IMG/VR virus record: IMGVR_UViG_3300017971_000001
Coordinates: 181,277-245,276 of that record
Reading direction: 5' to 3' (one strand)
Length of the DNA stretch: 64,000 nt
Of this stretch, positions 34,081 through 55,463 are shown in pieces (the first letter of the stretch is position 1; each line of letters begins with the position of its first letter). The notes beneath the pieces were generated by a model. It saw only the letters and a list, made by a program, of their open reading frames with translations. It did no database searches and had not been told where the DNA came from. The position numbers were made by a program, and so were the translations under genes.

Positions 34081-34084
34081 CGAC

Positions 34085-34411: not shown

Positions 34412-34412
34412 C

Positions 34413-34634: not shown

Positions 34635-34642
34635 GAGTTCGC

Positions 34643-34990: not shown

Positions 34991-34992
34991 AT

Positions 34993-35298: not shown

Positions 35299-35302
35299 AG
35301 CT

Positions 35303-35964: not shown

Positions 35965-36013
35965 TTGGTGGCAGGGCCAGCAGACTTGCCTACGATCGAG
36001 CTAGGGAGTCTGT

Positions 36014-38072: not shown

Positions 38073-38076
38073 AGCC

Positions 38077-38904: not shown

Positions 38905-38907
38905 GCC

Positions 38908-39225: not shown

Positions 39226-39228
39226 TCC

Positions 39229-39531
39229 ATGGATCGACAGCAACCCTACACCCCGTGGGTCGAAGCGCCTACGGGCTTGACGGTTCCGCCTCGGCAGCTG
39301 CCGGCGGCGCACGTCAACCAGTTGAGCAATCCGCGCCTGCTCGAGCAGCAGCGCGGCATGGCCCAATTGGCGGTAGGTGCTGCTGGATTCCTCCTCGCCG
39401 GCTACCACGGCTACCGGCGGAACGACTCCTACCTCTGGGGCCTGCTGTGGGGTCTCGGCGGATTCACTTGTCCTGTGGTGACGATTCCGATCGCCATTTC
39501 GCAGGGTTATGCCAACCCACTCAAGGGGTAG
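39229..39531 (+). CDS. Small two-TM membrane protein
   Basis: LAVGAAGFLLAGYHG and LWGLLWGLGGF. Confidence 0.72.
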   Translation: MDRQQPYTPWVEAPTGLTVPPRQLPAAHVNQLSNPRLLEQQRGMAQLAVGAAGFLLAGYHGYRRNDSYLWGLLWGLGGFTCPVVTIPIAISQGYANPLKG

Positions 39532-41039: not shown

Positions 41040-41047
41040 GAAGAGAT

Positions 41048-42079: not shown

Positions 42080-42142
42080 TGGATCGGGTCGTCCGCCGAG
42101 CAGTTCGCTACTTGCTCCTAGAGAGCCTTGAGGGGTAAAACA

Positions 42143-43492
42143 ATGCACCGACGCGAATACAACCCCCGCTACTCGTTCTCCGAGCCGCGCCCAAACCCTG
42201 ATTGGCACCCGGGCGGTGGCATGCGGATCGGGGGTCGGTATCGCCCTGGCAGCGGACGCTTCCATGCGCACCGCGGATCGGGCTATCGCCACGGCGGCGG
42301 CCGTCGCTACGACGGCGAGTACTACCCCGGCGGTGGCTACTACCCCCAAGCCAATCCTGCGGTCGCCGGTATTCAGATCGGCGACAAGGTCATGCCGGCC
42401 TCGCGCTTCCATGCGCGCCGCTGCCCCTTCGTGCGCGGCCGCGTCGTCGACCTGAAGCACAAGAAGTACGGCGACCTCGCTCGCGTCGAGACAGAAGACG
42501 GTCGGATCGTGACCGTCACGCTCGACACGATCAAGCGCTGCGGCATGCGCACGCGCAGCAACCCGCGGCGTGTCCGTCGCAACTGGGTCCCCAGTCACTG
42601 GAACGAGTGCGAGTCCTGCGGCAACCGGTGCTATCCGCACGAGCGCCTGTGCGTCTACTGCGAGCAGGCTGAGTTCGATCGCCTGCCGGGTCATATGACC
42701 GAGCTCAAGCGTTGCCCGAAGTGCGACCGCTTCGCATGCCTCGGCGGGCGTCACTGCAAGCCTCGGCCTCGCGGTTCTGGCCCCGGCCCCTACCTCGAGA
42801 ACCCTTACGCCTCCAGGGCGAAGGCGAAGGAACTCGCGCGCCTGGTCGAGTCCAAGCCAGGAATCCGCAAGATCGCTCGCCGGACCTACAGCCACGGCAC
42901 GGTCCCCCGCGAGGTCGAGTGCGAACTCGAGCCCCTCGGGCCGTCCATGCTGCTCGGTAGTCGTCGCTACGGGCGGACCAAGGGTGGCATGGTCGACTCC
43001 TACGCCAAGGAGTTCGACTTCCCTGCCCCCAACGAAGAGGAGCGGAAGTTCGTTGTCTGCAAGGGCGCGAACGAAATCGAGGCTGTCGCTGACGCATTGC
43101 CTCCGGGCCGCGGCTTCAAGAAGCGGCTTGAGTCCGCGCTCTCGACGAAGCGCTTCCAGGGCAAGCTCCCCGTGCAGAAGCGAATCGATCGAATCATGAA
43201 GGGCGGCATGCTGACGCAGCGTCAGACGACTGCGTTCTTGAAAAGCACGGACGCTGATCGCCTCTACGAGTTGGCGGAGCTCAAGCGCCGGGTCGACCGC
43301 GTCTTCTACCCGAGTATGCGGAAGCTGCTCATGCACGAAGAGGTTTCGGAGAAGCTGAGGCCCGCCCCGGCCCGCAAGAAGCGTTCGACCAAGAAGAAGG
43401 CTGGCAAGAAGGTCAGCAAGAAGAAGGTCGCCGCCGCTAAGAAGAAGGCCAAGAAGAAGACGACCAAGAAGCGTCGCCGGCGGGGTGCTTAA
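42143..43492 (+). CDS. Basic NP-segmented protein with SH3/KOW-like and Cys-finger modules and Lys tail
   Basis: NP junctions separate a Gly/Tyr region, IQIGDKV..GRVV..VTV, CESC/CVYC/CPKC and a KK-rich tail. Confidence 0.78.
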   Translation: MHRREYNPRYSFSEPRPNPDWHPGGGMRIGGRYRPGSGRFHAHRGSGYRHGGGRRYDGEYYPGGGYYPQANPAVAGIQIGDKVMPASRFHARRCPFVRGRVVDLKHKKYGDLARVETEDGRIVTVTLDTIKRCGMRTRSNPRRVRRNWVPSHWNECESCGNRCYPHERLCVYCEQAEFDRLPGHMTELKRCPKCDRFACLGGRHCKPRPRGSGPGPYLENPYASRAKAKELARLVESKPGIRKIARRTYSHGTVPREVECELEPLGPSMLLGSRRYGRTKGGMVDSYAKEFDFPAPNEEERKFVVCKGANEIEAVADALPPGRGFKKRLESALSTKRFQGKLPVQKRIDRIMKGGMLTQRQTTAFLKSTDADRLYELAELKRRVDRVFYPSMRKLLMHEEVSEKLRPAPARKKRSTKKKAGKKVSKKKVAAAKKKAKKKTTKKRRRRGA

Positions 43493-44775
43493 TGGCCGCT
43501 CGCAAGAAGCGCGCCAAGCGCGCCAAGAAGAAGGTTCCGGGGCCGCGTCGGTATCACATTGAGCGCGCTATGGGCTGGGTCGATCACGGACTCGCTCACC
43601 CGGGCGAGCACGAGCACGCTTTGCGCGAGGCGCACGATCACCTGGTCCATGCCAAGCAGGCAAGGCGGAACCCTCGCCGTCTACCCGTGCGCAGCAACCC
43701 CATGCTGGCAGTTGTTGGCAATCCGCCTCGGCGTCGTCGCGTTCGCCGCAACCCCATGCTCGCGATCGTCGGGAATCCGCACGAAGAGGAAATGACCCCG
43801 GGCGCCATGCGCCGCCGGATCACCGAACTCAAGCTCGAGCTTGACGACGCGAAGTACTTCAAGCACTCGCCTATGCGGATCGCAGGACTCGAAGACGAGA
43901 TCGCCGAACTCGAAGACGCGCTTGACGCTGCAGAGGAACAGTTCGAGCGTAGGTCGCGCGCTGGACTTTCTCGCTCTCGCGTTGAAGACGAGCGCCGCCG
44001 TGAGCGCGAGCGCTACATGCGCGATCGCCGGCGCAACCCGCGTCCTGAAGTTCACCCGCTCGCCTACGAAGCGCGCCGCCGTTACCACGAAGACCTCATG
44101 GCAGGCCATGGAGACGCCGCTGAATACTGGCGCGGCCAGGCCGGGGCGTTCTTCACGGACGCGGTTCACCCCGACTACATGCGCGAGATCTACGAACTCG
44201 AGCAGCGCGAACTCGAACGCCGGAACCGAAACGCGACTGGCAAGCGCGCCAAGAAAAAGTCTGGCCGCAAGGGTGGCAAGAAGTCCAAAAAGCAAGTTGC
44301 AGGGCCAGGCGGACGGGATAGCTTGAAGAAAGAGGGCAGGAAGGTTCGCAAGAATCGGACTGCAGGGAAGTCCAAGAAGGCGAAGCCAAAACTCAAGCGC
44401 TACACGCTCGAGGAAGCCAGGAAGAAGTTCGAAGGATTCGACGAAGCGCTGAAGGCCTACAAGCGTTTTCACAAAGCGAATCCGAGCCACGTCGACGTCT
44501 ACGAAATTGACGACGGCAAGCCTGGCAAAACGGTTGACCGAGTTCATGCAGCACTCCACCGGACAGTCGAAACCAACTACCTCGTGCCTGACGGCTGGGA
44601 GTCCAACAAGAATGGCTCCCTCTGGAAGCACGAGCACGTTGAAGGCTTCAGCCTCGACAACCCCGTTGGCGAACCTGATCCGGAAGACTTCCCGCTCGAA
44701 GTGCTCGACCCAGCAACCGGCACGACTCGCAAGTTCGGCGGTCGCTTCCGCGTCACGACGTGGTGGTACGACTGA
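43492..44775 (+). CDS. Basic NP-repeat protein
   Basis: Eight NP; duplicated R(S/R)NPMLA(V/I)VGNP; TAATG overlap. Confidence 0.8.
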   Translation: MAARKKRAKRAKKKVPGPRRYHIERAMGWVDHGLAHPGEHEHALREAHDHLVHAKQARRNPRRLPVRSNPMLAVVGNPPRRRRVRRNPMLAIVGNPHEEEMTPGAMRRRITELKLELDDAKYFKHSPMRIAGLEDEIAELEDALDAAEEQFERRSRAGLSRSRVEDERRRERERYMRDRRRNPRPEVHPLAYEARRRYHEDLMAGHGDAAEYWRGQAGAFFTDAVHPDYMREIYELEQRELERRNRNATGKRAKKKSGRKGGKKSKKQVAGPGGRDSLKKEGRKVRKNRTAGKSKKAKPKLKRYTLEEARKKFEGFDEALKAYKRFHKANPSHVDVYEIDDGKPGKTVDRVHAALHRTVETNYLVPDGWESNKNGSLWKHEHVEGFSLDNPVGEPDPEDFPLEVLDPATGTTRKFGGRFRVTTWWYD

Positions 44776-44787
44776 GCGAGGTGCGCT

Positions 44788-46641
44788 GTGTATCTGATCC
44801 CTGTTCTCAATCCGCCGCCCAGCGCCATGCCCCTCGCTGGGACCAAGACGAAGCGCAAGCCCAAGCGGGCCGCGCCCAAGAAGACCAAGTCGGCCGGGAG
44901 GAAGTCCGTGGCTAAGAAGAAGGTTCGCAAGAACAGCAGCCGCAAGCGCACGAGCAGCTACTCCGGTGGCCGCGCTCAGCGCAAGCGCTACCCCAGCGGC
45001 AAGCGCCGCAACCTGACCTGGGTCGAGGCTGCGCGATCGTCTGGCGCGGTCTACACGCCGAACTCGCTCATGACCAAGAAGGACGGCCGCGGTCGGCTGA
45101 AGTTCGTCCCGGTCACGAGCGGCAAGGTCGGTAAGCCCATGTCGAAGCAGGACGCGCTCGCGGCCAAGCGCCCGGTCGTCGGCTTCCTACCCAAGTGGCT
45201 GATCGACTTCTGGTACGACTCGGGCGCTGCGGACATGAAGACCGCGCGTCAGCAGAAGAGCAAGAAGTACAAGGACGCGGTCCAGTACTTCAACGCGGCC
45301 CAGAAGGCGCTCGCCGAGCAGCGGAAGAAGCGCGGCACCAGCTGGAAGCGCGCGACCCAGTACAAGACCAAGGGCCGCGGCAAGAACAAGAAGAAGGTCC
45401 GGGTCCCGGACTTCGAGATCCTGGACGACGGCTCGGTCAAGTTCCGATCGGGCCGTGGTCCCAAGACGTCAATCACCCTGTTTCGAGGCTTTGCTCCGTC
45501 GGAGGTGCAACAGCGGCACCTCATTGAAGGCGGTTTCGCGGGCAAGGCTGGACCTGGAGGAGGTCGCGTGAAGCTGAACCGAAAGCGGAAGCGCCGGGCG
45601 AAGGTTCGCAAGAACCCGGCGCGTAAGAAGAAGGCCGTGAGCAAGAACAAGCCACGGCGTAGCAAGAAGAAGACGAAGAGTCGGAAGAAGAGCCGCCGTC
45701 GCGCGGTCCTGAACAACCGGCCCAAGTCCAAGCGTCGGAAGAAGGCGACGAAGCGCAAGGCCGCGCGCCGCAAGAGCACGAAGCGTCGGAAGAATCCTGC
45801 GCGCAGCCGCAAGCGGCGCGTGCGGAAGAACCCGGCTCGCAAGTCGCACTCGCGCAAGCGTCGTCGTCGCAAGAGCAGCGCTCTGAGCCGGGTTCGCCAG
45901 AACCCCATGGGCGCGACCAAGAAGAACCCCATGGGCGCGCTGAAGCAGTACCTCGACAAGCTGCAGACCGCTTCGCCCTACGTCACTGGCGCTCACCTCG
46001 TGATCGGCATGGGCGTCAGCGGGCTCTTCTGCGGCGGTCTCCGTCAGTTCCCCGTCGTCGGGCGGATCTTCAGCCTTCGTGGTCGTTACCTGGGCGCCGC
46101 CGGCCGTTTCGCCGGTTGCCTCGGCGCGGCTTCGCTGGCTGGCCTGACCGGAACCCTGCTCGAGCGCACCCTGGGCAAGAACGTCAAGTTCCTCCAGAAC
46201 GCTGGCGGCAACTTCTTCGTGGCTGGTGTCGCCCTCGCGGTCGGCAACCTCCTCCTCGAGCTCATTCCCGGCGCCTCGTCGATCCTGCCTGGGATCAGCA
46301 ACCCCCGCGGCATGCGCACCATGCGGCACATGTCCATGGCGGCTCCGGCCGGCGAAGAGGGCATGGGCAGCTACGGCAGCAGCGTCCTGAGTCCCGAGGA
46401 CCTGGTCGCTGGCGAGTCGAGTGCCCGTCTGACCAACGAGTTCCACGGCATGAGCGACTTCCTGGAGCTCAGCGGCATGGGCTCGTCGGGCGGTCAGCCG
46501 ATTCCGATCGAGGACCTGCGCGGCTACCCCGGCTGGTATGGCGGTGGCAACTCGATCTCGGGCATGGGCGACTACATGGAGCTCAACCCGACCGCTCCCC
46601 TCGTCACCGACGGGTTCAACCCCGGCACCGAGAACTTCTAG
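44788..46641 (+). CDS. Very basic NP-repeat protein with hydrophobic segment and C-terminal G(M)G motifs (core-precursor-like)
   Basis: Three RKNPAR, RQNPMG, KKNPMG; LSGMG and ISGMG near the C-terminus. Confidence 0.8.
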   Translation: MYLIPVLNPPPSAMPLAGTKTKRKPKRAAPKKTKSAGRKSVAKKKVRKNSSRKRTSSYSGGRAQRKRYPSGKRRNLTWVEAARSSGAVYTPNSLMTKKDGRGRLKFVPVTSGKVGKPMSKQDALAAKRPVVGFLPKWLIDFWYDSGAADMKTARQQKSKKYKDAVQYFNAAQKALAEQRKKRGTSWKRATQYKTKGRGKNKKKVRVPDFEILDDGSVKFRSGRGPKTSITLFRGFAPSEVQQRHLIEGGFAGKAGPGGGRVKLNRKRKRRAKVRKNPARKKKAVSKNKPRRSKKKTKSRKKSRRRAVLNNRPKSKRRKKATKRKAARRKSTKRRKNPARSRKRRVRKNPARKSHSRKRRRRKSSALSRVRQNPMGATKKNPMGALKQYLDKLQTASPYVTGAHLVIGMGVSGLFCGGLRQFPVVGRIFSLRGRYLGAAGRFAGCLGAASLAGLTGTLLERTLGKNVKFLQNAGGNFFVAGVALAVGNLLLELIPGASSILPGISNPRGMRTMRHMSMAAPAGEEGMGSYGSSVLSPEDLVAGESSARLTNEFHGMSDFLELSGMGSSGGQPIPIEDLRGYPGWYGGGNSISGMGDYMELNPTAPLVTDGFNPGTENF

Positions 46642-46690: not shown

Positions 46691-46856
46691 GCGACTCCGG
46701 ACTTTGGCCAACATTCACGTCTGCTTGCTGTGTCATGAGGGCGCAGTGCTACTCGGCGGCAGTGCAGATTTGAGGCCAGGAATGAAGCGTCAGGATTGGC
46801 GCGCCTGGTAGCCAAGATTGGGTGACCTCGGGAGAGGCCCCACAGGAGTTTTTCGC

Positions 46857-47495
46857 ATGACCATGCGCGTTGTCCCCATTCCCGCGATCGGCGCCGTTGG
46901 CAGCCGCCCCCGCAAGGAGCCGATCTACGACACTGAGGGTTGGGCTCCGGCCGTCCCCCAGCCGTCCGAGATCGTCACCTTCGTCAACTTCTCGGGCTTC
47001 AACACTGGTGGCCTGTCGCTGCAGAAGTCCTTCGGCCGCGACACCAATCTGCAGGGTCAGAATGGTCTGCCCGCTGCACACCACCACTACTGGTATGGCC
47101 TGCGTGTCAAGATCCGCTCGCTCGACGCGGACCTCGGCACGGCCGCCAACGTCGTGGTGTTCGAGGAGATCAACCGGATCCGTGAGCTCGGCTTCACCCA
47201 GTTCCGGTTCGCCAGCAGCGAACTGATCACCGTGCAGGCGGACGAGGCCCCCAGCGGCACCGGCCCCGCCTACGCGAACACGACCCACTCGGCCGCGACG
47301 ATCCTGTCGCTCCCGAGCGGCGTGCCCACCCGCGGAAACGCGAAGGACGTCACGATCAGCGGCCGCCCGGTCGAGATCGTGGCCCTCGAGGCCTTCCGTG
47401 TCGTCTACGGCACCCCCACCGGGATCACCCCGACCGTGTCGCTGTACTGCAGCGTGATCCTCGAGGGTCTGCTGCTGCGCGGAATCACCGGCTAG
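46857..47495 (+). CDS. Single jelly-roll-like capsid protein (candidate major capsid protein)
   Basis: AGGAG RBS, ATG 46857; PIYDT..RDTNLQGQNGLP..YGLRV..LEGLLLR beta-rich pattern; strong terminator after it suggests high expression. Confidence 0.62.
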   Translation: MTMRVVPIPAIGAVGSRPRKEPIYDTEGWAPAVPQPSEIVTFVNFSGFNTGGLSLQKSFGRDTNLQGQNGLPAAHHHYWYGLRVKIRSLDADLGTAANVVVFEEINRIRELGFTQFRFASSELITVQADEAPSGTGPAYANTTHSAATILSLPSGVPTRGNAKDVTISGRPVEIVALEAFRVVYGTPTGITPTVSLYCSVILEGLLLRGITG

Positions 47496-47532
47496 AAGGT
47501 CTCCTTCTAAAGTCGTGCCATTAAACGGCTTG

Positions 47533-47563
47533 AACAGCCGGCCCGGTAACGGGCCGGCTGTTT
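47533..47563. terminator. Perfect inverted repeat, likely bidirectional terminator
   Basis: AACAGCCGGCCCG-GTAA-CGGGCCGGCTGTT. Confidence 0.85.
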
Positions 47564-47570
47564 CCATTTT

Positions 47571-49205
47571 ATGAAAGGTCTTCTTCTTCGAGTGACGATA
47601 GGCTCGATCCCTAGAAGGAGGCTCTGCATGAAGTGGAGAGGTCAGACTTTTGAGGGTGAGTCTTTCTACCTTCTTGGCTTGATAGCTGCGGACGGATACG
47701 TGGCGAAAGAAGGGGGAAGCAACCAAAGCAAGGTGTCGATCAACTGCGGCAATTCCGCCGGAGATCAAAAGTTCGCAAAGTATGTCGCCCGCTTGATTGA
47801 TTCAACGTGGGGGCAGAGATTCGGATTTTCATGCACGCTTCGCCATGTGGATCGGAGGCCGCCTCGCGTTCCTTACTGGGAGCCCCATTGCTGCTCCAGG
47901 TCCTTGGCAGGCGCCATTAGGAAATTTTGCGAAGGTCGAATCGGAACGTATTCCTGGCGAATCCCGCCCGCCCTCTTGAGGAGTCCTGGGCCTGAGCTTT
48001 TGTCTTGGATCCAGGGCTTCGCGGACGGAGACGGGACCGTATCCGTCAAGCCGCCCAAGAGGGAGGTGAGAATTTCAAGTGTGAACCGAGAGGGGATTGA
48101 AGATATCAGGCGCGCCCTGTCTCACTTTTCAATCAGCGCGAAAGTTTACGAGCACGATCGCGAGATCGAAAACTGGGAGCCCTCTATAAACATAGTCATT
48201 TGCGACCGCCGCTCGCTTGAGATCTACGCTCAGAAAATCGGATTCCGCCAACCCGACAAGAAGCGCAAGCTCGCCGAGGCGCTTGCGTCCTACAAGCGCG
48301 ATCATGCCAACCTACTTCGACATGAGGTCGAAGATCTGCTGCCCGAAGTGATCCGCAGGCGAGCATGCGGCGAGTCCTTCGCTGAGATCCAGGAGGCGCT
48401 CGAGCTCGCAACCGTCGAAGTTCCTAAGGGCATGCTCAAGCGCGCCGTTCGCTCTGCCAGGGGCAAGTGTGTCGTCTGCCTCAAGTCCCCTGCCACGCAC
48501 TCGATCCCCCGCGTGGTCCGAGGGCGGAGCGGCAAGTATGCCTGCGATCCGTGCCTGATCGAGCTCGAGCCCAAGGAGGAATGGGGCGAGGAGTTCGTCC
48601 AGCTGAAACTTCGAGAGGTTGCAGATTTCCTCGACGAGAACCATTACCTCGGGCGCCGCTCGAGCCGGAACGCGTTCGCGCTGCGGAACAAGCACGGCGT
48701 GCTCGTATTCTCCCGCAAGCCTCAGGCGAGCTCGCTCCCCCGTGACTGGCTCGAGCTCTCGCGCTGGTGCATTGTCTCGGACGACATGAACGCGGGGACG
48801 AAGCAGTGGTCTCGCGCCAAAGCTTGGCTTCGCGAGAACACCGAAGCGACGACCGTCGTCACCTACTCCGATCCGTCCCGGCACGACGGATCGCTGTATC
48901 GAGCGGCAGGGTTCCTTTGGGCTCCTTCTTCTCAGTTCCTGCTCAAGAACTTGTCGCTCACTGGGGAGCGTCACCCGGGCAAGCCTTACGTGGACAAGAA
49001 CCGCTGGGTCTACCCGCTTCGACCCGACGCCCGGCGCGCCGAGGCGCTGACGGTCCGTCACCCTTGGCTTTACAACAGCGACGAGCTCAAGTTCCTCTGC
49101 GACTGGCCGGAGCCGAAGTGGCGCGGTCGCGGCACTCGCTTCTCCGGCGGCGGCAAGGACTACCAGCGCTGGAAGGAGCTTCTCCAGGAGCGATCGAACT
49201 CCTAG
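47571..49205 (+). CDS. LAGLIDADG endonuclease-like domain fused to a Mom-like (GNAT-fold) DNA-modification domain
   Basis: YLLGLIAADG and WIQGFADGDG; CVVC..CDPC; FLDENHYL..LELSRWC..VVTYSDP..HDGSLYRAAGF; start may be ATG 47628. Confidence 0.72.
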   Translation: MKGLLLRVTIGSIPRRRLCMKWRGQTFEGESFYLLGLIAADGYVAKEGGSNQSKVSINCGNSAGDQKFAKYVARLIDSTWGQRFGFSCTLRHVDRRPPRVPYWEPHCCSRSLAGAIRKFCEGRIGTYSWRIPPALLRSPGPELLSWIQGFADGDGTVSVKPPKREVRISSVNREGIEDIRRALSHFSISAKVYEHDREIENWEPSINIVICDRRSLEIYAQKIGFRQPDKKRKLAEALASYKRDHANLLRHEVEDLLPEVIRRRACGESFAEIQEALELATVEVPKGMLKRAVRSARGKCVVCLKSPATHSIPRVVRGRSGKYACDPCLIELEPKEEWGEEFVQLKLREVADFLDENHYLGRRSSRNAFALRNKHGVLVFSRKPQASSLPRDWLELSRWCIVSDDMNAGTKQWSRAKAWLRENTEATTVVTYSDPSRHDGSLYRAAGFLWAPSSQFLLKNLSLTGERHPGKPYVDKNRWVYPLRPDARRAEALTVRHPWLYNSDELKFLCDWPEPKWRGRGTRFSGGGKDYQRWKELLQERSNS

Positions 49206-49383
49206 CAAACGCTCCCAACAAAGCAAACGCGCACTTGGAACTCGGTGGCAGGGCCAGGCAGGTCGTTTAGCCTCGAGATAGAGAACGTCTGCACCCGCAG
49301 GCAGACCGACAACTTCTCTTCTCTGGCGGGGCTCGTCGGTCCGCGGCGGGCCGGCGAGCGCCGCCGATTCCAAGGAGCACTCC

Positions 49384-50826
49384 ATGCCCGCTCACACGTC
49401 CACGGTCAGCCAGGGCTGGGGAGCCACGCACACCTGCGCCTACTGCCATGGCTTCGGCAGCATTCCGCCCCTGATTCGCGGCAGCGACGGGCGAATGCAT
49501 ATCAATCCCGACTACGAAATGGTGAAGCGGTTCCACCTCGCCGCTGAGCCGTTCGGGGAGACGCTCGGACCTGGCGAGTCGCGCACGTTCACGTTCACGG
49601 TTCCCGCCGAGGAGGAAGGTCTGGGCGACCTGCTGGTCAACGAGTTCTTCGCGCTCTACGAGCCCGAGGGGATCCGCAACGTCTTCGTCGACTTCCTCAA
49701 CCTGCAGACCGATCGCCTGTTCCAGAACGCGCCCGTCCCCACGACGCTGATCATGGGCAACGCGCACCTCAACACCTGCCTGCCCTGCTGTTTCCTGATC
49801 CAGGCGACCAACAGCCTGCAGGTTCGCGTGCGCAACGAAGAGTCGACCGACATTCAGGTTCGTCTCGTCGCCCGCGGCAAGCGCTTCCTGACTCGCGACC
49901 ACGAACTCCGCGCGCGCATGCTCCAGTACTGGAACATGCTCCCCAGCTACAGCTACTTCCTCACACTCGACGAAGAGGAGGTTGTGGTCCCTGCCGGAGA
50001 GACCGTCAGCGCGACCATGAAGGTTCCTGGCCACGGAGACTTCGAAGTCAAGTGGCCGCGCTGTGAAGTGCTGAACGCGGCGACGGGCGCGCAGGAGAAC
50101 GCCAACGGCATTCTGGTCACCGTCGCCGAAGGGATCGGTCGTCAGTGGCAGAGTGATCCGCTCCCGCTCGGCGCGTTCGTCGCGACACCGACGCTCGACG
50201 TGGCCGGGTTCCCGGGCGGGATCTACCGCGCTGCCAGCGCTGGCCACTGCCCCAGCTACACCCAGCTGTTCAAGCGAAACACGTTCGTCCGTCACACGTT
50301 CGAGAACACGAGCGGCACCGACCTGATCGTTCGTCTGACCTACGCTGGCTGCTTCCACCAGGTCGACGAGTGCCCGCCCGGACGCTCGATCGATCGGATC
50401 CGCAGTCTCGAGCCGACGATCGGTCCCATGCTGATCCCGCAGGGCGACTACTGCGCCCCGCAGCAGCAGTACTACCCCGAGGAGCCCTTCTACAACGAAG
50501 AGCCGATCTATCAGTCCCCTCAGGCTTCGGGCGGAATGCAGCCGCCTGCTCAGCAGCCGGGCGGGAGCGCGATCTTCACGACGGTCCCTGGCGGAGCGGG
50601 CTCGGTCCAGGCTGGCGGCCCCAGTAGCTACGTCCCCAAGTACTACGAGGCCGGCGGCGGCGGCATGGCCGTCCCTAAGGCTGAGATCGCCAAGGCGCAC
50701 GGCCTCAAGCCCGGCCAGGTTTACGCTCCCGGCTTCCGCGGAATGCAGGGCATGGGCGCTGGCCCTGTGATCCGCCGCGGGCCCTACGTCTGGGATCCGA
50801 TCGCTCGGACCTGGAAGCGAGGCTAG
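49384..50826 (+). CDS. Double jelly-roll-like capsid protein, paralog 1
   Basis: Two similar beta-rich halves each ending ..L..(R/A)G(K/C)(R/F); NAPVP..IMGN..LP..LQVRVRN; C-terminal MQGMG. Confidence 0.7.
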   Translation: MPAHTSTVSQGWGATHTCAYCHGFGSIPPLIRGSDGRMHINPDYEMVKRFHLAAEPFGETLGPGESRTFTFTVPAEEEGLGDLLVNEFFALYEPEGIRNVFVDFLNLQTDRLFQNAPVPTTLIMGNAHLNTCLPCCFLIQATNSLQVRVRNEESTDIQVRLVARGKRFLTRDHELRARMLQYWNMLPSYSYFLTLDEEEVVVPAGETVSATMKVPGHGDFEVKWPRCEVLNAATGAQENANGILVTVAEGIGRQWQSDPLPLGAFVATPTLDVAGFPGGIYRAASAGHCPSYTQLFKRNTFVRHTFENTSGTDLIVRLTYAGCFHQVDECPPGRSIDRIRSLEPTIGPMLIPQGDYCAPQQQYYPEEPFYNEEPIYQSPQASGGMQPPAQQPGGSAIFTTVPGGAGSVQAGGPSSYVPKYYEAGGGGMAVPKAEIAKAHGLKPGQVYAPGFRGMQGMGAGPVIRRGPYVWDPIARTWKRG

Positions 50827-50829
50827 TCC

Positions 50830-52326
50830 ATGACGTTTCCAGTCGAACCGCCGGTGATCCTCGAGTACGGCATGGGGGACTGCCGGACGTTCATGAACAT
50901 TCCGCCCCTCGTCCATTGGGACGACGGGTCGACGTGTATCAACCCTGACTTCGACGCGGTGACCAAGTTCCACCTCGCCGCCAAGGGGATCGAGTTCGCG
51001 GACCGGAGTCTCGTGACTAACGTCACGATCAACCCCGGCGAGACGGTCGACTTTCAGCTGACCGTCGAGCGTGAGGAGAACGGCCTCGGGCACCTTCTGA
51101 TCAACGAGCTCCTGATTCTGACGAACCCTGAGGGCGCGACAGACCTGACGGTTCAGATCAAGTCGATCCAGGGCGACAGCACCTACATGAACGGGCCGAC
51201 GCCGATCACGCACGTGTTCGGCAACGCGCACCTCAACTGCTGCCTGCCCTGCCCGATCATGCTGTATCCGAATCAGACCTTGATCCTCAAGGTGACCAAC
51301 AATGAGGCCTTCTCGGTCTCGACTCGGATCACGGCCCGCGGCAAGCGGTTCATGCCCTACCACAACATGAGCCTGATCTCCGAGCTCGAGCGCTGCTGGT
51401 CCATGAACCCGAGCTCGCCCTACTTCGCGAGCTTCGACCAGGGCCCGATCACGGTTCCTGCCAATGGAACCGCGCAGGGGCAGATTACGATCCCCGGGGG
51501 CGGCTGGTTCCAGATCGAGTACATCCGCAGCACGCTCGGCTCAAGCGACTTGATCGTTGACGTGACCGAGGGTCGGATCGGCAAGCGCTACATGAACCGC
51601 CCGGTCCGACTGGGCCTCTATGCCACCGAGGACCTGCAGATCACTGGATTCCCGGGCAACCTGTACCGCGCAGCCTCGGCCTGCCACTGCCCGCCGGTCC
51701 AGCAGTTGGTTCGCGGAAACATTCGCATGATCCACGACTTCACCAACCCGACCGGCGCTCCGATCACGGTGAACCTCACCTATGTCGGCTGCTTCCACAA
51801 GGGGGTTGATATCTGCCCGCCGCAGAAGGACCTCGACCGCGTTCGCCGGCACCAGCACATGATCGACTGCTGCGGAGGCGAGCTCTTCCTGGACCTCGCA
51901 GACGAGGAGCCGTGCCCGCCCGCCTCTGTGCCCGCGTTCACTTCGGAGTATCTGAAGTTTGCGGAGGACGGCGAGACCCCCTTCCCACGTCCGCTTGAGC
52001 AGAACATGCCTGCGCCTGAGCCCGTGCCTCAGGTCAAGCAACTGTGGCAACCGGGGGACCACGGCGCGCCGATCTCGCCCATGCAGCTTCCGCCCGATCA
52101 GGCGTACGCGATCAACCATGCTGGCCGCCTCGCGGTCGTGCAGATCGATTCGCAGCGCCGCCCGATTCGCTACGTGCGTCCGGAAGAGCTCCCTATGGGC
52201 ATGGACGCCTCCTACTCCATGTATCGTGCCAACTTTGGGGATCAGGACCCTGAGTTCCGCAAGTGGCTCGCCTCCCAGGGGGGTGGGGTCAGCGGACTGG
52301 GTCAAGGTGAATGGGAGGCACTCTAG
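50830..52326 (+). CDS. Double jelly-roll-like capsid protein, paralog 2
   Basis: Colinear with 49384 (INPD..KFHLAA, GNAHLN.CLPC, RGKRF, Y.GCFH); C-terminal VSGLG. Confidence 0.7.
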   Translation: MTFPVEPPVILEYGMGDCRTFMNIPPLVHWDDGSTCINPDFDAVTKFHLAAKGIEFADRSLVTNVTINPGETVDFQLTVEREENGLGHLLINELLILTNPEGATDLTVQIKSIQGDSTYMNGPTPITHVFGNAHLNCCLPCPIMLYPNQTLILKVTNNEAFSVSTRITARGKRFMPYHNMSLISELERCWSMNPSSPYFASFDQGPITVPANGTAQGQITIPGGGWFQIEYIRSTLGSSDLIVDVTEGRIGKRYMNRPVRLGLYATEDLQITGFPGNLYRAASACHCPPVQQLVRGNIRMIHDFTNPTGAPITVNLTYVGCFHKGVDICPPQKDLDRVRRHQHMIDCCGGELFLDLADEEPCPPASVPAFTSEYLKFAEDGETPFPRPLEQNMPAPEPVPQVKQLWQPGDHGAPISPMQLPPDQAYAINHAGRLAVVQIDSQRRPIRYVRPEELPMGMDASYSMYRANFGDQDPEFRKWLASQGGGVSGLGQGEWEAL

Positions 52327-53117
52327 TGGCCAGCAACATGCCCGGTTCGGGCGACCCTTTCTCGCGTGCCTACGCGGGCAAGGGCGGAGGCGGGGCTCGC
52401 AAGAAGTCCACCCCAAAGAAGAAGCCTGCTAAGAAGTCGGGCATGGGCAGCATGAACGACCCTTACGCGGGATACGTTCCTGGCATGGAGACGTGCCCGC
52501 CCCTGCCGACCCAGGCGCTTGAGGAGTGCCTGCGGTCCGCGGTCGATCTGCTGGAAGACACGCTCCAGATTTCGGATCTCGCGCCGTGGATCCACCCGCC
52601 CTACCGCTCGGCCTACTACTGCAAGGACGTGCGCGCCGTGGTCAGCACGACAGCTGGCGTCAACGCGGTGACGAACGCCTCCGGGATCGCGCTCGCGGCC
52701 GCGAACTCGACCTTTGTGGCGCTCACTCCGCTCGAAATGGAGAGCGCGGCCAAGCCGGTCACGATCTTCACGCTCAAGACGCCGACGAGCTCGGCGATCC
52801 GCGTCGCTTCCTGGGGAATCGCCAACCTGACAGGTCCGCCCGAGCAGGTCGAGATCCGGGTCAAGGCGGCCACGACCTACGGAACTCCCGGCCCGCCGAA
52901 TCCTGGGATCAGCGGGGCGCAGGTCAGCGACCACCAGCCGACCTTCTTCCTCATGCAGGGAGGTCAGGACCTAGAAGTTCAAGTGCGACTGCGCGACGTG
53001 ACCCAGGGCCCAGCGCTCCTCCGGTTCGGGATCTGCTACTGGGAGTATCCGATCTCCAAGCGCACGGACTCTCGCGACAAGACGCGCCTGCGCAGCGGCT
53101 ACGGAACGGGGTGCTAA
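52326..53117 (+). CDS. Penton/vertex-like jelly-roll protein
   Basis: Beta-strand pattern TIFTLKTP..IRVASWG..QPTFFL..LEVQV..ICYWEYP; follows the capsid genes. Confidence 0.5.
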   Translation: MASNMPGSGDPFSRAYAGKGGGGARKKSTPKKKPAKKSGMGSMNDPYAGYVPGMETCPPLPTQALEECLRSAVDLLEDTLQISDLAPWIHPPYRSAYYCKDVRAVVSTTAGVNAVTNASGIALAAANSTFVALTPLEMESAAKPVTIFTLKTPTSSAIRVASWGIANLTGPPEQVEIRVKAATTYGTPGPPNPGISGAQVSDHQPTFFLMQGGQDLEVQVRLRDVTQGPALLRFGICYWEYPISKRTDSRDKTRLRSGYGTGC

Positions 53118-53492
53118 GTGAGCTTCCTCAACAGCAAGGAAGTCGTCCCGATCTTTCTGGACGACCGAACCGGCGGATCCGGTCTTACCCCCGGCGAGAC
53201 GGTGACGACCGAGCTCTTTCTGGGGGGTATCCAGAACGGGCGGATCCAAGGCGACTTCTCTTCAAGTTCGCCCGGCGTCTTGACGATCGAGGCCGCGCCC
53301 GCGTTTCCGCTCGCGGCTTTCGGCAGTCCGGACAACCTGACCTACACGATCCCGCTGGACCCGGACCAGCCTAACTACCACTACGACTTCACGATCATTA
53401 TCGTGCTGCCGGCGATTCGGATCACGTTCCAAGATTCGGGTGCCGGAAGCACGTACTTCAGGGCCCGTGTAGCGGCTCTGCCACTTGGGTAG
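53118..53492 (+). CDS. Small beta-rich structural protein
   Basis: Directly abuts the previous gene; IRITF..FRARV. Confidence 0.6.
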   Translation: MSFLNSKEVVPIFLDDRTGGSGLTPGETVTTELFLGGIQNGRIQGDFSSSSPGVLTIEAAPAFPLAAFGSPDNLTYTIPLDPDQPNYHYDFTIIIVLPAIRITFQDSGAGSTYFRARVAALPLG

Positions 53493-53543: not shown

Positions 53544-53996
53544 ATGGCTTTCGGAGGAACTCAGGCGAATCTCGCCGCCGGTGCGCGCACTGGTCAGTCC
53601 CGTTTCAGCATTCACGAGGTGACCGGCGTCACGCTCGCCGCTAACGCGGCCGCGTCCCCGGACCGCGCGAACGCTGACACTGGCGCTCTCACCACCAACC
53701 AGGGCGCGATCGACGCTGTCCCCGCCAACACCAACCAGCTGCTCGCTGGCTGGGGCCCCGGCGCGGACAACTGGACCCAGACCGACGTGGACGCGGTCAC
53801 CGCGCTCGCGCAGGACACGGGCGCCAACGTGACCAAGCTGGCGACCAGCAAGGCTCTCGTCGCGAACGTCAACCCCGCTCCCAGCGGCTCGACGATCAGC
53901 AACGAGAACTGCGAGGTCCTGGTCCACAACCTCGGCGCCGGCGCTGCTGACGCGGTCGAGGTCCGTCTGATTCTCGAGTCCACGCTGGTCCGCTAG
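53544..53996 (+). CDS. Ala/Thr-rich minor structural protein
   Basis: AGGAG RBS; 150 aa. Confidence 0.7.
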
Positions 53997-54024: not shown

Positions 54025-54681
54025 ATGACGATCTTCACGATCCCAGCAGGTCCTCCAGGCGCGACTGGTCCAACCGGTCCAGGTGGAGGCCCGCCCGGCC
54101 CTACGGGTCCGACTGGGGTCCAGGGTCCTACGGGCCCTGGCCCCGGAACGACTGGGCCAACCGGTCCCACTGGCCCCGGCGGCGGACCCTCGGGCGCAAC
54201 AGGCCCGACGGGTGCCGCGGGCGCCACAGGTCCCACCGGGCCTGGCTTCTCTTTCACAGTGGGCGCCGTGATTTCTCCGCCCGCGGGCGTGACCGCGATC
54301 TCGACGACACCGATCACTGACCCCACGACGGTCACGGTCAGTGACCCCAATGGCCTCCGATCTGGCGGTCGGATTGTGATCCCCCAGACGGGCGTCTGGC
54401 TGATCGTCCTCGCTGTCGCCGCGCGGAACTTTTCAACCGTCGGCAACAACGCGCTGATCGCCAGCATTCAACGCAACGGGGTGAACTTCAACGACGAGAC
54501 GATCAATATCGTCTCGAACGGGCTCGGCACCAACTTGATCGAGCAGAAGTGCGTGGTCTCCGCTCCGCTCAACTCGGGGGATCAGATCGGATCCAGGTTT
54601 GTTCTCGTCTCTGGAACCGGTGAACTCGTCGGCAGCGTCGGGCTTGGCGACACTCACCTCTCGGCTTACCGGATCGCCTAG
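54025..54681 (+). CDS. Collagen-like (GPT) fibre with C1q/TNF-like beta head
   Basis: Interrupted G-P-T triplets; [22 protein letters not shown]. Confidence 0.78.
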
Positions 54682-55463
54682 TGACCCTCTTCACGATTCC
54701 CAGACTCGGCGGCGGCGCGGGCGCGCCCGGCCCAACTGGCCCGACGGGTCCGGCGGGCGGCCCCCCTGGCCCAACGGGACCGCTGGGGCCAACGGGTCCC
54801 GGGCCTGGCGTGACGGGACCTACGGGGCCAACAGGACCCGGTCCCGGCGTGACCGGCCCGACGGGCCCGACGGGATCCGGCGCGGCGCTTCAGCCGCTGG
54901 TCGTCTACCCGAGTCAGGCGGCGAACGCAGGCGTTGGCGGCGGAGACACCGCGGCAGTCGTCTGGGGCGGCGCCGGTGTCGCCGCTTACGTCGGAGCGGC
55001 CTCTGGCTTCGGGCAGCCTGGCGACGGTTGGGCCGTCAGTATTTTCAACCCTCCTGGGAACCCCGCCACAAGCGAGACAGTCGTTCTGGAGACGGGCGGT
55101 GCCTTCACCGGCGCGATCATTGGCTTCCACCTGACACTTGCCGTTCCCAGTAACTTCACCGGCTTTCAGAGCAACGCAATCCAAATTGCGACTCGGAGCG
55201 TTGGCGGCGGCGGGACGACCAGCGTCCAACTCGATCTCTACGATCCGACCAACGACGGCTACCTTGGCACGCCCCAGGCGAGCGCCTCTCGTGCGCTTCC
55301 GACTTCGCTCGAGAACTCCTACACCGATCTCACGATCCTCAGTAGCTCGATCGTGAACTCCTTCACCCCGGGTGGCATGATTCACATTGCTTACCGCGTG
55401 GTCTCTACCACCGGTGCCACTTACGGCGCTGCCTTTTCGAACTTGCGGATCAATTGGCAGTAA
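54681..55463 (+). CDS. Collagen-like (GPT) fibre with beta-sandwich head
   Basis: Paralogous start MT(I/L)FTIP; [11 protein letters not shown] repeats. Confidence 0.78.
   Translation: MTLFTIPRLGGGAGAPGPTGPTGPAGGPPGPTGPLGPTGPGPGVTGPTGPTGPGPGVTGPTGPTGSGAALQPLVVYPSQAANAGVGGGDTAAVVWGGAGVAAYVGAASGFGQPGDGWAVSIFNPPGNPATSETVVLETGGAFTGAIIGFHLTLAVPSNFTGFQSNAIQIATRSVGGGGTTSVQLDLYDPTNDGYLGTPQASASRALPTSLENSYTDLTILSSSIVNSFTPGGMIHIAYRVVSTTGATYGAAFSNLRINWQ

What the first reader, a model, noticed from the sequence alone, without database searches (positions are those of the whole stretch)
46857..53492. Mixed capsid set: one single jelly roll plus two paralogous double jelly rolls and a penton-like protein
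Seen: a 212 aa beta protein with its own strong RBS and terminator, then two colinear ~490 aa paralogues with internal duplication. Known: Halopanivirales use two single jelly-roll MCPs, whereas PRD1/PM2/STIV use one double jelly-roll MCP. Inference: a heteromeric lattice, possibly informative about the single-to-double jelly-roll transition and about building a larger capsid.
Basis: inference. Interest (0 to 1): 0.8.

Follow-up and report, generated by a model that had tools for sequence, protein, structure and literature searches.

The report
Jelly-roll capsid genes, large phage
This stretch carries the conserved shell-building genes of an undescribed, very large (245 kb) bacterial virus: one small single jelly-roll protein, two duplicated double jelly-roll proteins and two smaller partners. 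The two halves of the double proteins still resemble each other in sequence, which bears on how double jelly-roll capsid proteins arose.

Summary
46857-47495 encodes a 212-aa beta protein with an AGGAG ribosome-binding site and the strongest terminator in the region. 49384-50826 and 50830-52326 encode paralogues that are 40% identical over about 332 aa.

AlphaFold and Foldseek place the 480-aa protein among double jelly-roll (DJR) proteins: iridovirus, PBCV-1, STIV and PR772 capsid proteins, and cellular DUF2961. Its two halves are homologous at profile level (hhalign 97%, E 1e-10), which is unusual for DJR capsid proteins.

The 212-aa model is a single beta-sandwich. Its weak matches are almost all viral jelly-roll coat proteins, and it is the most conserved protein of the module.

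"Penton-like" (263 aa, 124 aa) is unverified.

The order basic protein, SJR, DJR, about 260 aa, about 120 aa recurs in 267 metagenomic protein clusters. The ancestral set has one DJR; tandem duplication arose at least twice.

The window is the last 64 kb of a circular 245-kb contig with no Pfam, PHROG or GenBank phage match for these genes. No packaging ATPase or tailed-phage hallmark was found in the 134 kb examined.

Stoichiometry and lattice remain untested.

The parts
46844..46848 (+). Shine-Dalgarno AGGAG, 8 nt upstream of the ATG of the 212-aa gene
   Evidence: Read directly from the sequence.
46857..47495 (+). 212-aa single beta-sandwich (jelly-roll-like) protein. It is the most conserved protein of the module and a candidate major virion protein or penton base.
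   Evidence: AF2 model pLDDT 84, pTM 0.80. Foldseek lists are dominated by SJR coat proteins, with SPV1 VP4 at prob 0.91 and BFVD I1ZBH9/I1ZBI0 at prob 0.99. 83 clusters, up to 90% identical. Identity to relatives is 58-89%, against 34-55% for the DJR on the same contigs. GC3 is 0.88.
47532..47573 (+). Intrinsic terminator or attenuator after the 212-aa gene: 14-bp stem with 10 GC pairs, then a T-run
   Evidence: Strong hairpins sit at the same place in L006, L008, L009, L014 and L019.
47628..49205 (+). Free-standing LAGLIDADG homing endonuclease fused to a Mom-like domain. It is a mobile insertion and not part of the capsid set. The longest ORF starts at 47571; the public gene call and the RBS GAAGGAGG favour 47628.
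   Evidence: Pfam LAGLIDADG_3 at 8e-19 and Mom at 4e-8. PHROG Mom-like at 1e-11. Present at the same site in L014 and L019 but absent in L006, L008, L009, L021, L023 and L024. In two metagenomes, contigs of relatives match the SJR gene and then the DJR gene with nothing matching the endonuclease between them; the sequence between is not known.
49384..50826 (+). DJR paralogue 1 (480 aa). JR1 is about aa 26-172 (nt 49459-49899) and JR2 about aa 186-330 (nt 49939-50373). A disordered P/Q/G-rich linker spans aa 341-393, followed by a small C-terminal domain.
   Evidence: AF2 pLDDT 80. Foldseek: SGIV MCP E 8e-6, PBCV-1, STIV, PR772 P3, DUF2961, PHM. JR1 against JR2 by hhalign: 97%. RBS AAGGAG at 49372-49377.
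50830..52326 (+). DJR paralogue 2 (498 aa). The core is homologous to paralogue 1; the C-terminal extension is unrelated.
   Evidence: BLASTP E 3e-81, 40% identity over aa 18-339. Its orthologues form their own 100/100-supported clade together with L009, L014 and P0044.
52326..53117 (+). 263-aa protein (268 aa from the ATG at 52311). It has a G/K-rich basic N-terminal arm and a beta-rich C-terminal domain, and follows the DJR gene in every relative. Candidate vertex or minor capsid protein.
   Evidence: Orthologues lie in all loci. The match of its last strands to the G-H-I strands of JR1/JR2 is weak (hhalign E 0.003-0.006, prob 6-11%). Atlas leads are weak only.
53118..53492 (+). 124-aa protein, a conserved fourth member of the module. 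In some relatives it is a domain of a protein of 259-279 aa. Candidate small vertex or minor capsid protein.
   Evidence: hmmsearch E 1e-10 to 4e-16 in distant loci; hhalign 99% to the C-terminus of L009 13899-14678. The Atlas lead to XepA-type beta-sandwiches was not supported by Pfam.
53544..53996 (+).
   Evidence: 32-66% identical in L014, L009, L008 and L006, and found in L021. GC3 is 0.85.
40931..46641 (+). Four consecutive very basic proteins (K+R 21-24%) directly upstream. The last one (617 aa) also has a hydrophobic segment. Candidate DNA-condensing or core proteins.
   Evidence: Composition scan. A basic protein (K+R 24-26%) sits directly upstream of the SJR gene in L023 and L024 as well.
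31867..39531 (+). Run of at least 8 proteins, each with a single C-terminal hydrophobic segment. Candidate virion-membrane proteins.
   Evidence: Kyte-Doolittle scan. This role is an inference.
54025..55463 (+). Two collagen-like (GPTGP repeat) proteins with globular C-termini; candidate fibres or spikes
   Evidence: Translations. PHROG 'tail fiber' hits fall over the collagen repeats only.

Best explanation
The interval is the conserved core of the virion-building module of an undescribed lineage of large dsDNA viruses of high-GC bacteria. The host lead is Myxococcota.

Shown here:
- A fixed gene order recurs across a large metagenomic family: basic protein, 212-aa single jelly-roll-like protein, DJR protein, a protein of about 260 aa, then one of about 120 aa.
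- The 480-aa protein has the DJR fold.
- Its two jelly rolls are homologous in sequence.
- In this sub-lineage the DJR gene is tandemly duplicated and both copies have been kept over a long time.
- A homing-endonuclease gene has inserted behind the 212-aa gene.

Inferred mechanism:
- The DJR proteins trimerise into pseudo-hexagonal capsomers, as homotrimers of each paralogue or as mixed trimers. These tile a large tail-less icosahedral shell.
- Their variable C-terminal extensions reach towards an internal membrane or core. The membrane would be built from the tail-anchored proteins encoded upstream; the core would be DNA condensed by the four basic proteins.
- The 212-aa protein is made in the largest amount. 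It has its own SD and terminator, the highest codon bias and the slowest evolution. It fills a second, highly constrained structural position, either the five-fold vertices or a second lattice or inner layer.
- The 263-aa and 124-aa proteins are vertex or minor capsid proteins.
- The collagen-like proteins are surface fibres.
For: Fold of the DJR:
- AF2 model pLDDT 80, with two beta-sandwiches.
- Foldseek probability-1.0 hits are SGIV, PBCV-1 and STIV capsid proteins, DUF2961 and PHM; PR772 P3 scores 0.99 and PNGase 0.97.
- These are exactly the DJR families defined in PMC8812541.

Fold of the 212-aa protein:
- AF2 pTM 0.80.
- Hit lists are dominated by viral SJR coat proteins, including SPV1 VP4 and two BFVD entries at prob 0.99. 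Atlas features point to PM2 P2 and PRD1 P3.

Paralogy and internal duplication.

Module conservation:
- 51 and 83 clusters in the two word-based searches, and 267 representatives at E<=1e-3 in the exhaustive search.
- The same gene order holds in L006, L008, L009, L014, L019, L021, L023, L024 and L030.

Expression and constraint:
- RBS and terminator.
- Hairpins after the SJR gene in all relatives examined.
- GC3 of 0.85-0.88.
- SJR 58-89% identical, against DJR 34-55%.

Viral context:
- The window is the end of IMG/VR contig IMGVR_UViG_3300017971_000001 (245,276 bp), whose ends overlap.
- The same length was assembled in another sample with a different start point.
- Tail-anchored and basic proteins lie upstream.
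- Collagen-like proteins and a glycosyltransferase lie downstream.

Absence of tailed-phage genes: no HK97, portal or large-terminase match by Pfam or PHROGs in the window, in 70 kb of further genome, or in about 150 kb of relatives' loci (and the precomputed Pfam).
Against: - No virion has been seen and no expression or proteomic data exist. No RNA run was listed.
- Foldseek TM-scores for the DJR are low (0.28-0.41), so the canonical side-by-side, vertical arrangement is not proven.
- The SJR matches have E>=0.0025.
- No FtsK/HerA-type packaging ATPase was found. No Walker A motif occurs in any called gene of the window or within 10 kb of the module in relatives, apart from two motif-only matches in L009: one in a basic-protein homologue and one in the C-terminal extension of its second DJR paralogue. 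In 134 of 245 kb the only P-loop protein is a UvrD-like helicase.
- 111 kb of the genome was not examined.
- Automatic labels call part of the related contigs Uroviricota.
- One unidentified protein hits PHROG 'terminase small subunit' at 1e-12. It is probably one of the HTH_17 proteins.
- The cellular DJR enzymes (DUF2961) match the model about as well as the capsid proteins do.
Confidence: 0.65

Rival explanations
1. Canonical DJR virus. One or both DJR paralogues are the only lattice-forming major capsid proteins, with the second copy specialised, for example for peripentonal positions. The 212-aa SJR protein is simply the penton base, and the 263-aa and 124-aa proteins are spike or cement proteins.
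For: - An SJR gene next to a DJR gene is the usual arrangement in DJR viruses (established knowledge of PRD1 P31/P3 and STIV A223/B345).
- DJR fold.
- SJR fold leads.
Against: - A penton base is needed in 60 copies. Yet the 212-aa gene has its own SD and a conserved terminator directly in front of the DJR genes.
- It has the top codon bias.
- It evolves roughly 2.5 to 4 times more slowly than the DJR.
- Two further small beta proteins, of 263 and 124 aa, are equally good penton candidates.
Confidence: 0.3
2. SJR-based shell. The 212-aa protein is the true major capsid protein, forming hexameric capsomers as in SPV1 or SSIP-1. The DJR paralogues are vertex, turret, outer-layer or receptor-binding components.
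For: - The 212-aa protein is the most conserved and appears the most highly expressed.
- Its best structural neighbours are the SJR capsid protein VP4 of SPV1 and two BFVD entries. Length and adjacent accession numbers fit SSIP-1 gp46 and gp47; this identification is an inference.
- The DJR copies evolve fast and carry variable C-terminal extensions.
Against: - The Foldseek E-values are weak.
- No sequence similarity links the 212-aa family to SSIP-1 gp45-47.
- DJR proteins known from viruses are lattice formers.
- The DJR is as universally present in the module as the SJR.
Confidence: 0.25
3. Not capsid proteins. The genome would be a tailed jumbo phage, or a non-viral element, and the DJR/SJR proteins would be carbohydrate-binding, enzymatic or adhesin proteins (DUF2961-like) working with the collagen-like fibres.
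For: - DUF2961 and arabinofuranosidase structures match at prob 1.0.
- Uroviricota labels appear on related clusters.
- A PHROG 'terminase small subunit' hit exists.
- Collagen-like proteins hit 'tail fiber' PHROGs.
- 111 kb of the genome is unexamined.
Against: - No Pfam DUF2961 hit was found.
- No hydrophobic N-terminal segment was found in either DJR protein by the Kyte-Doolittle scan; this is no signal-peptide test.
- No HK97, portal, large-terminase, sheath or tube hit turned up in about 134 kb of this genome or about 150 kb of relatives' loci.
- The module is always flanked by basic and membrane-anchored proteins, as in membrane-containing icosahedral viruses.
- The 'tail fiber' hits cover only the collagen repeats.
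Confidence: 0.1

Closest known systems
DJR major capsid proteins of Bamfordvirae (PRD1/PR772 P3, STIV B345, PBCV-1 Vp54, iridovirus MCP)
   Same: - Two jelly-roll beta-sandwiches in one chain, with an alpha-helix after the first roll.
- Foldseek probability 0.99-1.0.
- SJR genes are encoded alongside.
- A probable internal membrane (inference).
   Different: - No sequence or Pfam relationship.
- Low TM-scores (0.28-0.41).
- The two rolls are still sequence-similar (97% hhalign). [quoted passage not shown] That the halves of known DJR-MCPs also lack it rests on my own knowledge and was not checked.
- A C-terminal extension of about 140 aa.
- Two paralogous copies.
- No FtsK/HerA ATPase next to the genes.
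- The genome is 245 kb. The largest bacterial or archaeal genome in the review table read is 44 kb (SSIP-1), and Preplasmiviricota are described as under 50 kb.
[quoted passage not shown]
   Same: - The best BFVD structural neighbours of the 212-aa model (I1ZBH9, 211 aa; I1ZBI0, 256 aa; prob 0.99) fit SSIP-1 gp46 and gp47 by length and adjacent accession numbers.
- JR1 and JR2 of the DJR each match the same stretch of gp47 (aa 51-120): hhalign 48% and 36%, hmmsearch E 9e-6 among 33 proteins.
- A similar run of gene sizes: 211, 256, 132 aa against 212, about 260, about 120 aa.
- The literature lists SSIP-1 with a large capsid and possible SJR MCPs.
   Different: - The identity of the BFVD entries is inferred.
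- The sequence signal is a motif of 37-67 residues only.
- No other protein pair is similar.
- gp47 has no relatives from which to build a profile.
- No DJR-length protein is annotated in SSIP-1's structural gene block. Its genome is about a fifth to a sixth of the size.
Helvetiavirae / Halopanivirales (P23-77 VP16/VP17, HHIV-2, SH1) and Portogloboviridae (SPV1 VP4/VP10)
   Same: - Jelly-roll proteins of about 200 aa as shell components of membrane-containing icosahedral viruses.
- SPV1 VP4 is among the best structural neighbours of the 212-aa model (prob 0.91).
- SPV1 also lacks a packaging ATPase (PMC8812541).
   Different: - Those viruses use only SJR proteins. Here an SJR is permanently paired with a DJR.
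- There is no conserved ATPase, small MCP, large MCP gene block.
- No sequence similarity.
- The match of the 263-aa protein to VP17 is an Atlas lead of 0.74 only.
Cellular DJR proteins (DUF2961 glycosidases, PNGase F, PHM)
   Same: - Fold-level matches as strong as those to the capsid proteins.
- In DUF2961 the two rolls have also stayed structurally similar (PMC8812541).
   Different: - No Pfam DUF2961 hit.
- Viral genomic context.
- The proteins are always linked to the SJR gene and the genes of about 260 and 120 aa.

Membership tests
Bamfordvirae-type DJR-MCP viruses | Major capsid protein with two jelly-roll domains in one chain | tested here: met
   AF2 model. Foldseek hits to SGIV, PBCV-1, STIV and PR772 capsid proteins at prob 0.99-1.0. 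The 498-aa paralogue follows by 40% identity.
Bamfordvirae-type DJR-MCP viruses | Trimeric pseudo-hexagonal capsomers with jelly rolls vertical to the shell | not testable with these tools
   No multimer prediction and no model coordinates were available. TM-scores of 0.28-0.41 do not settle the relative orientation of the two rolls.
Bamfordvirae-type DJR-MCP viruses | FtsK/HerA-superfamily genome-packaging ATPase | tested here: inconclusive
   No Walker A protein was found in the window or within 10 kb of the module in 9 relatives, apart from two motif-only matches in L009. The only P-loop protein in 134 of 245 kb is a UvrD-like helicase. 111 kb is unseen. FLiP and SPV1 show that such an ATPase can be absent.
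Bamfordvirae-type DJR-MCP viruses | SJR penton protein encoded with the MCP | tested here: inconclusive
   There are three candidates, of 212, 263 and 124 aa. Only the 212-aa fold was modelled. None has been shown to be pentameric.
Helvetiavirae (Halopanivirales and relatives) | Two separate vertical SJR MCPs forming heterohexameric capsomers, encoded next to the packaging ATPase | tested here: not met
   The paired jelly rolls are fused into one DJR chain. No ATPase lies next to the module. There are no Pfam or profile hits to VP16/VP17-type families.
SSIP-1-like viruses | Homology of structural proteins to SSIP-1 gp45-gp48 | tested here: inconclusive
   Structure-level hits (prob 0.99) go to entries inferred to be gp46 and gp47. 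A motif-level profile match links JR1/JR2 to gp47. No other similarity was found.
Caudoviricetes (tailed phages) | HK97-fold MCP, portal, large terminase | tested here: inconclusive
   None was found by Pfam or PHROGs in 134 kb of this genome or in relatives' loci. However, 111 kb is unseen and only the top 25 PHROG families were displayed. One 'terminase small subunit' hit at 1e-12 has an unknown owner.
DUF2961 cellular DJR glycosidases | Match to Pfam PF11175 | tested here: not met
   Pfam returned no family for either paralogue at E<=0.1.
LAGLIDADG homing endonucleases (gene 47628-49205) | Two LAGLIDADG motifs or domains; patchy presence at one genomic site | tested here: met
   Pfam LAGLIDADG_3 at 8e-19 in two stretches. 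Present in the window, L014 and L019, and absent at the same site in six other relatives.

The most novel reading that the evidence does not exclude
This is the morphogenetic core of a previously unrecognised group of 'giant' tail-less bacterial viruses, with genomes of at least 89-245 kb on the long contigs seen (245 kb is the one complete genome).

Their DJR capsid protein arose by a separate, comparatively recent duplication and fusion of a single jelly roll of the SSIP-1 gp47 type. It was then duplicated again, at least twice independently.

The shell is therefore built from one SJR and one or two DJR species. That would make it a living intermediate for the single-to-double jelly-roll transition, and an independent route to very large capsids in bacteria.
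Probability: 0.3. Interest if true: 0.9.

Novelty: new variant of a known kind. Interest (0 to 1): 0.78.

Why it matters
**Origin of the DJR protein.** Whether DJR capsid proteins arose by fusion of viral SJR genes or were taken from cellular DJR proteins is an open question (PMC8812541). It is hard to address because sequence similarity among DJR capsid proteins is largely lost. Here the two halves are still alignable, and an SJR partner and a possible SJR relative (SSIP-1 gp47) exist. The question becomes testable by phylogeny and structure.

**Size.** The bacterial and archaeal jelly-roll viruses in the review table read here reach 44 kb at most, and Preplasmiviricota are described as under 50 kb. 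A 245-kb member would extend the size range about five-fold. It would raise the question of how such a shell is measured and filled without a recognisable packaging ATPase.

**Duplication.** Repeated tandem duplication of the DJR gene offers a natural experiment on homo- versus heterotrimeric capsomers.

Tried and rejected
- **Family libraries.** Pfam and PHROGs on all module proteins and most other ORFs gave no capsid family.
- **PDB by sequence.** Profile searches with the DJR, SJR and 263-aa alignments found nothing meaningful.
- **GenBank phages.** tblastn of the 498-aa and 212-aa proteins gave no match, even at E 10.
- **SSIP-1.** Single-sequence phmmer of 37 window proteins against the SSIP-1 six-frame translation found nothing significant. 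The 212-aa, 263-aa and 124-aa families showed no similarity to SSIP-1 gp44-49. A homologue search for gp47, meant to build a profile, found only gp47 itself. UniProt accessions for gp46 and gp47 could not be retrieved, so the identity of I1ZBH9 and I1ZBI0 stays inferred.
- **124-aa protein.** The XepA lead was not supported by Pfam at E<=5.
- **263-aa protein.** The match to the DJR core reached only 6-11% probability.
- **Genome walking.** Three exact-protein look-ups failed because the gene calls differ. The first window ORF is the tail of a 1100-aa gene.
- **Expression.** No RNA runs were listed. The DNA contigs laid on the region gave no expression information.
- **Literature.** The searches found no description of this lineage.

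Full report
**1. What is in the interval**

On the + strand, 46857-53492 holds six genes, not four:
- a 212-aa protein (46857-47495);
- a 525-aa LAGLIDADG/Mom-like protein (47628-49205; the longest ORF starts at 47571);
- a 480-aa protein (49384-50826);
- a 498-aa protein (50830-52326);
- a 263-aa protein (52326-53117; 268 aa from the ATG at 52311);
- a 124-aa protein (53118-53492).

The 212-aa gene has AGGAG 8 nt before its ATG. It is followed by a 14-bp, GC-rich hairpin and a T-run at 47532-47573. That is the strongest terminator-like site in 43-58 kb, with a fold z-score of -8.6.

Third-position GC is highest in this block: 0.88 for the 212-aa gene, 0.85 for both paralogues and 0.83 for the 263-aa gene. 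This fits highly expressed genes.

**2. Paralogy and internal duplication**

The 480- and 498-aa proteins are 40% identical over about 332 residues (E 3e-81). Their last 140-160 residues are unrelated.

I split a 35-sequence family alignment (A1) into residues 26-172 and 186-330. Profile-profile comparison of the two parts gave 97% probability, E 1e-10, over 111 collinear columns at 22% identity. The same profiles scored at most 11% against the other module proteins.

An HMM of the first half also picks up the second half in distant family members.

**3. Folds**

*The 480-aa protein.* The AlphaFold2 model, built with the alignment, has mean pLDDT 80. It shows:
- two beta-sandwiches (about 30-170 and 188-326), separated by a helix;
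- a disordered P/Q/G-rich linker (341-393);
- a small C-terminal domain.

Foldseek against the PDB gave 35 hits at E<=1e-3. Those with probability 1.0 are the Singapore grouper iridovirus MCP (E 8e-6), a PBCV-1 capsid chain, the STIV MCP, DUF2961 proteins (4kq7, 8ic8) and PHM. PR772 P3 scores 0.99 and a PNGase 0.97.

These are exactly the four DJR families defined by Krupovic, Makarova and Koonin (PMC8812541). TM-scores are low (0.28-0.41). The DJR class is therefore supported, but the canonical capsomer geometry is not proven.

*The 212-aa protein.* The model (pLDDT 84, pTM 0.80) is a single beta-sandwich with one helix and an extended N-terminal arm.

Its Foldseek matches are weak (PDB E>=0.03; BFVD E>=0.0025). 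Even so, the lists are almost entirely viral SJR coat proteins: circoviruses, luteoviruses, picornavirus VP1, SPV1, and single rolls of PRD1 P3 and vaccinia D13.

The BFVD hits with the highest probability (0.99; a third is a Streptomyces tectivirus protein, and SPV1 VP4 has 0.91) include two unnamed entries, I1ZBH9 (211 aa) and I1ZBI0 (256 aa). Their lengths and consecutive accessions fit the adjacent structural proteins gp46 and gp47 of Salisaeta icosahedral phage 1. This identification is an inference, because the accession could not be confirmed.

Language-model features also place the 212-aa protein nearest to PM2 P2 and PRD1 P3 among annotated families, at a score of 0.74-0.77, which is a lead only.

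- The 263-aa protein has a G/K-rich basic N-terminal arm. Its last strands carry the same "L-x-V-x-x-x-N ... V-x-V-x-x-x-G" pattern as the last strands of both jelly rolls. The profile match is only 6-11% probability.
- For the 124-aa protein there is an Atlas lead to XepA-type beta-sandwiches. Pfam did not support it.
- "Penton-like" thus remains unverified for both.

**4. The module is old and conserved; the two-DJR state is derived**

Word-based searches found 51 clusters of the DJR protein and 83 of the 212-aa protein. All are unnamed metagenomic proteins. An exhaustive HMMER search of 1.84 billion representatives found 267 at E<=1e-3. Many are only 280-420 aa, with the full DJR core and no C-terminal extension.

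In every context retrieved, the order is basic protein, SJR, DJR, a protein of about 260 aa, then a domain of about 120 aa.

| Loci | DJR genes after the SJR |
|---|---|
| L006, L008, L019, L021, L023, L024 | one |
| the window, L009, L014, the P0002 contig | two |

In a maximum-likelihood tree the 480-type and 498-type proteins form two well-supported clades (100/99 and 100/100) inside one clade (99/98). The tandem pair in a groundwater contig (L030) lies elsewhere, so tandem duplication happened at least twice.

On the same contigs the 212-aa protein is far more conserved than its neighbours:

| Protein | Identity to the window |
|---|---|
| 212-aa SJR | 58-89% |
| DJR | 34-55% |
| 263-aa protein | 28-42% |

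Strong hairpins follow the SJR gene in all relatives examined.

**5. The endonuclease is an insertion**

The LAGLIDADG (Pfam 8e-19) plus Mom-like (4e-8) gene sits between the SJR terminator and the next gene in the window, L014 and L019. It is absent at that site in six other relatives.

In two metagenomes, contigs of relatives match the end of the SJR gene and then the DJR gene, with nothing that matches the endonuclease between them; the sequence between is not known. The gene is not part of the capsid set.

**6. Genome and context**

The window is the last 64 kb (181,277-245,276) of IMG/VR contig IMGVR_UViG_3300017971_000001. The two ends of that contig share sequence. A contig of identical length but different start point was assembled from another sample. 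The genome is therefore complete, and either circular or terminally redundant, at about 245 kb. Relatives lie on contigs of 89-190 kb. One is a 190-kb contig binned in a Myxococcota MAG, which gives a host lead.

Upstream of the module:
- at least eight proteins with a single C-terminal hydrophobic segment (31867-39531);
- four very basic proteins (40931-46641).

Downstream:
- collagen-like proteins;
- methyl- and glycosyltransferases.

I read these as the virion membrane, the DNA-condensing core and glycosylated fibres. This is an inference.

I examined 134 of the 245 kb, plus about 150 kb of relatives' loci.
- No HK97 capsid protein, portal or large terminase was found.
- No FtsK/HerA ATPase was found either.
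- The only P-loop protein is an intein-bearing UvrD-like helicase.
- One unidentified protein hits PHROG "terminase small subunit" at 1e-12. Two HTH_17 proteins are the likely source.
- FLiP and SPV1 show that jelly-roll viruses can lack a packaging ATPase.

**7. Relation to SSIP-1**

SSIP-1 is an unclassified 44-kb, T=49, membrane-containing phage. It is reported to have two MCP types, possibly single jelly rolls.

Beyond the structural hits of the 212-aa model, the DJR family profile matches SSIP-1 gp47. Among 33 SSIP-1 proteins the hmmsearch E-value is 9e-6. JR1 and JR2 separately hit the same stretch of gp47 (aa 51-120) with hhalign probabilities of 48% and 36%. All other SSIP-1 structural proteins score below 1%.

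The signal covers only 37-67 residues, and gp47 has no relatives from which to build a profile. It is a specific but unproven lead. It suggests that the jelly roll duplicated here may be of the gp47 type.

**8. Interpretation**

Best reading (0.65): this is the capsid core of a new lineage of large, probably membrane-containing, tail-less bacterial viruses.
- The DJR paralogues are capsomer formers.
- The 212-aa SJR is a second, abundant and highly constrained shell component.
- The 263-aa and 124-aa proteins are vertex or minor proteins.

The data do not decide whether the 212-aa protein is the penton base (the canonical model) or a lattice or inner-layer protein (the SSIP-1/SPV1-like model). 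Its conservation, codon bias and terminator argue for abundance. Gene adjacency argues for the canonical model.

A non-capsid role in a tailed phage is unlikely (about 0.1) but is not excluded until the remaining 111 kb is annotated.

**9. Verdict**

- No family library, solved structure (by sequence) or deposited phage genome matches these proteins.
- The literature searches found no description of the lineage.
- Novelty: a new variant of a known kind.
- Interest is high, because the sequence-similar halves of the DJR and the 245-kb genome bear directly on the origin of DJR capsid proteins and on capsid size limits in bacterial viruses.

Noticed in passing
window 47628-49205: A free-standing LAGLIDADG endonuclease is fused to a Mom-like domain. 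It is inserted directly behind the terminator of the 212-aa gene. It is present at the same site in two divergent relatives (51-54% identical) and absent in six others.
   Followed up: partly
window 31867-39531: A run of at least eight proteins (100-737 aa), each with one hydrophobic segment at the extreme C-terminus, in a tail-anchored pattern. They are possible virion-membrane proteins.
   Followed up: partly
window 40931-46641: Four consecutive proteins have 21-24% Lys+Arg and repeated R-x-NP / NPM(L/G)A motifs. The last one also has a hydrophobic segment and GMG repeats. A basic protein also precedes the SJR gene in distant relatives (L023, L024).
   Followed up: partly
window 49384-52326: The DJR family is unusually cysteine-rich, with nearly invariant motifs (CAYCHGF, LNCCLPCCF, CHCP, AGCFH..ECPP). 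These may form disulfides or bind metal and so stabilise the shell.
   Followed up: no
window 54025-55463; L013/L015 1265-6225 and 8062-10313: There are several collagen-like proteins (218, 260, 737 and 911 aa), followed by methyltransferase and glycosyltransferase genes. This recalls the glycosylated fibres of giant viruses.
   Followed up: partly
L012/L013 (contig ends); window = contig 181,277-245,276: The same 41-mer lies at both ends of the 245,276-bp IMG/VR contig. A contig of equal length but permuted start comes from another sample. The genome is therefore complete, and circular or terminally redundant.
   Followed up: yes
L027 5583-8987 (contig about 167-170.6 kb): A UvrD-like helicase is interrupted by an intein with a LAGLIDADG domain. 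It is the only Walker A protein in the 134 kb examined. A PD-(D/E)XK nuclease lies nearby, and a 1100-aa protein with a weak, below-threshold primase-type zinc-finger match runs into the start of the window.
   Followed up: partly
window 61304-63906; L028 3294-5537: Candidate DNA-modification genes: a 2OG-Fe(II) oxygenase (PHROG 2e-31), a weak tRNA-guanine-transglycosylase-like protein, a DUF5591 protein, and the Mom-like domain. Together they hint at hypermodified DNA.
   Followed up: no
window 4338-4412: A single tRNA-Leu (anticodon AAG) gene.
   Followed up: no
window ORFs not pinned down; L015 11148-12038 and 14308-15024; L020 2682-3869: Accessory genes unusual for phages: PTH2-type peptidyl-tRNA hydrolase, dual-specificity phosphatases, a patatin-like phospholipase, a papain-like peptidase, a transglutaminase-like domain and a HiPIP-like protein.
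   Followed up: no
L030 10001-12168: A groundwater contig (63 kb) carries a second, phylogenetically independent tandem pair of DJR genes (365 and 356 aa) behind its SJR gene.
   Followed up: partly
one of 99 proteins in alignment A6 (owner not identified): A PHROG 'terminase small subunit' (phrog_57) hit at 1.3e-12.
   Followed up: no
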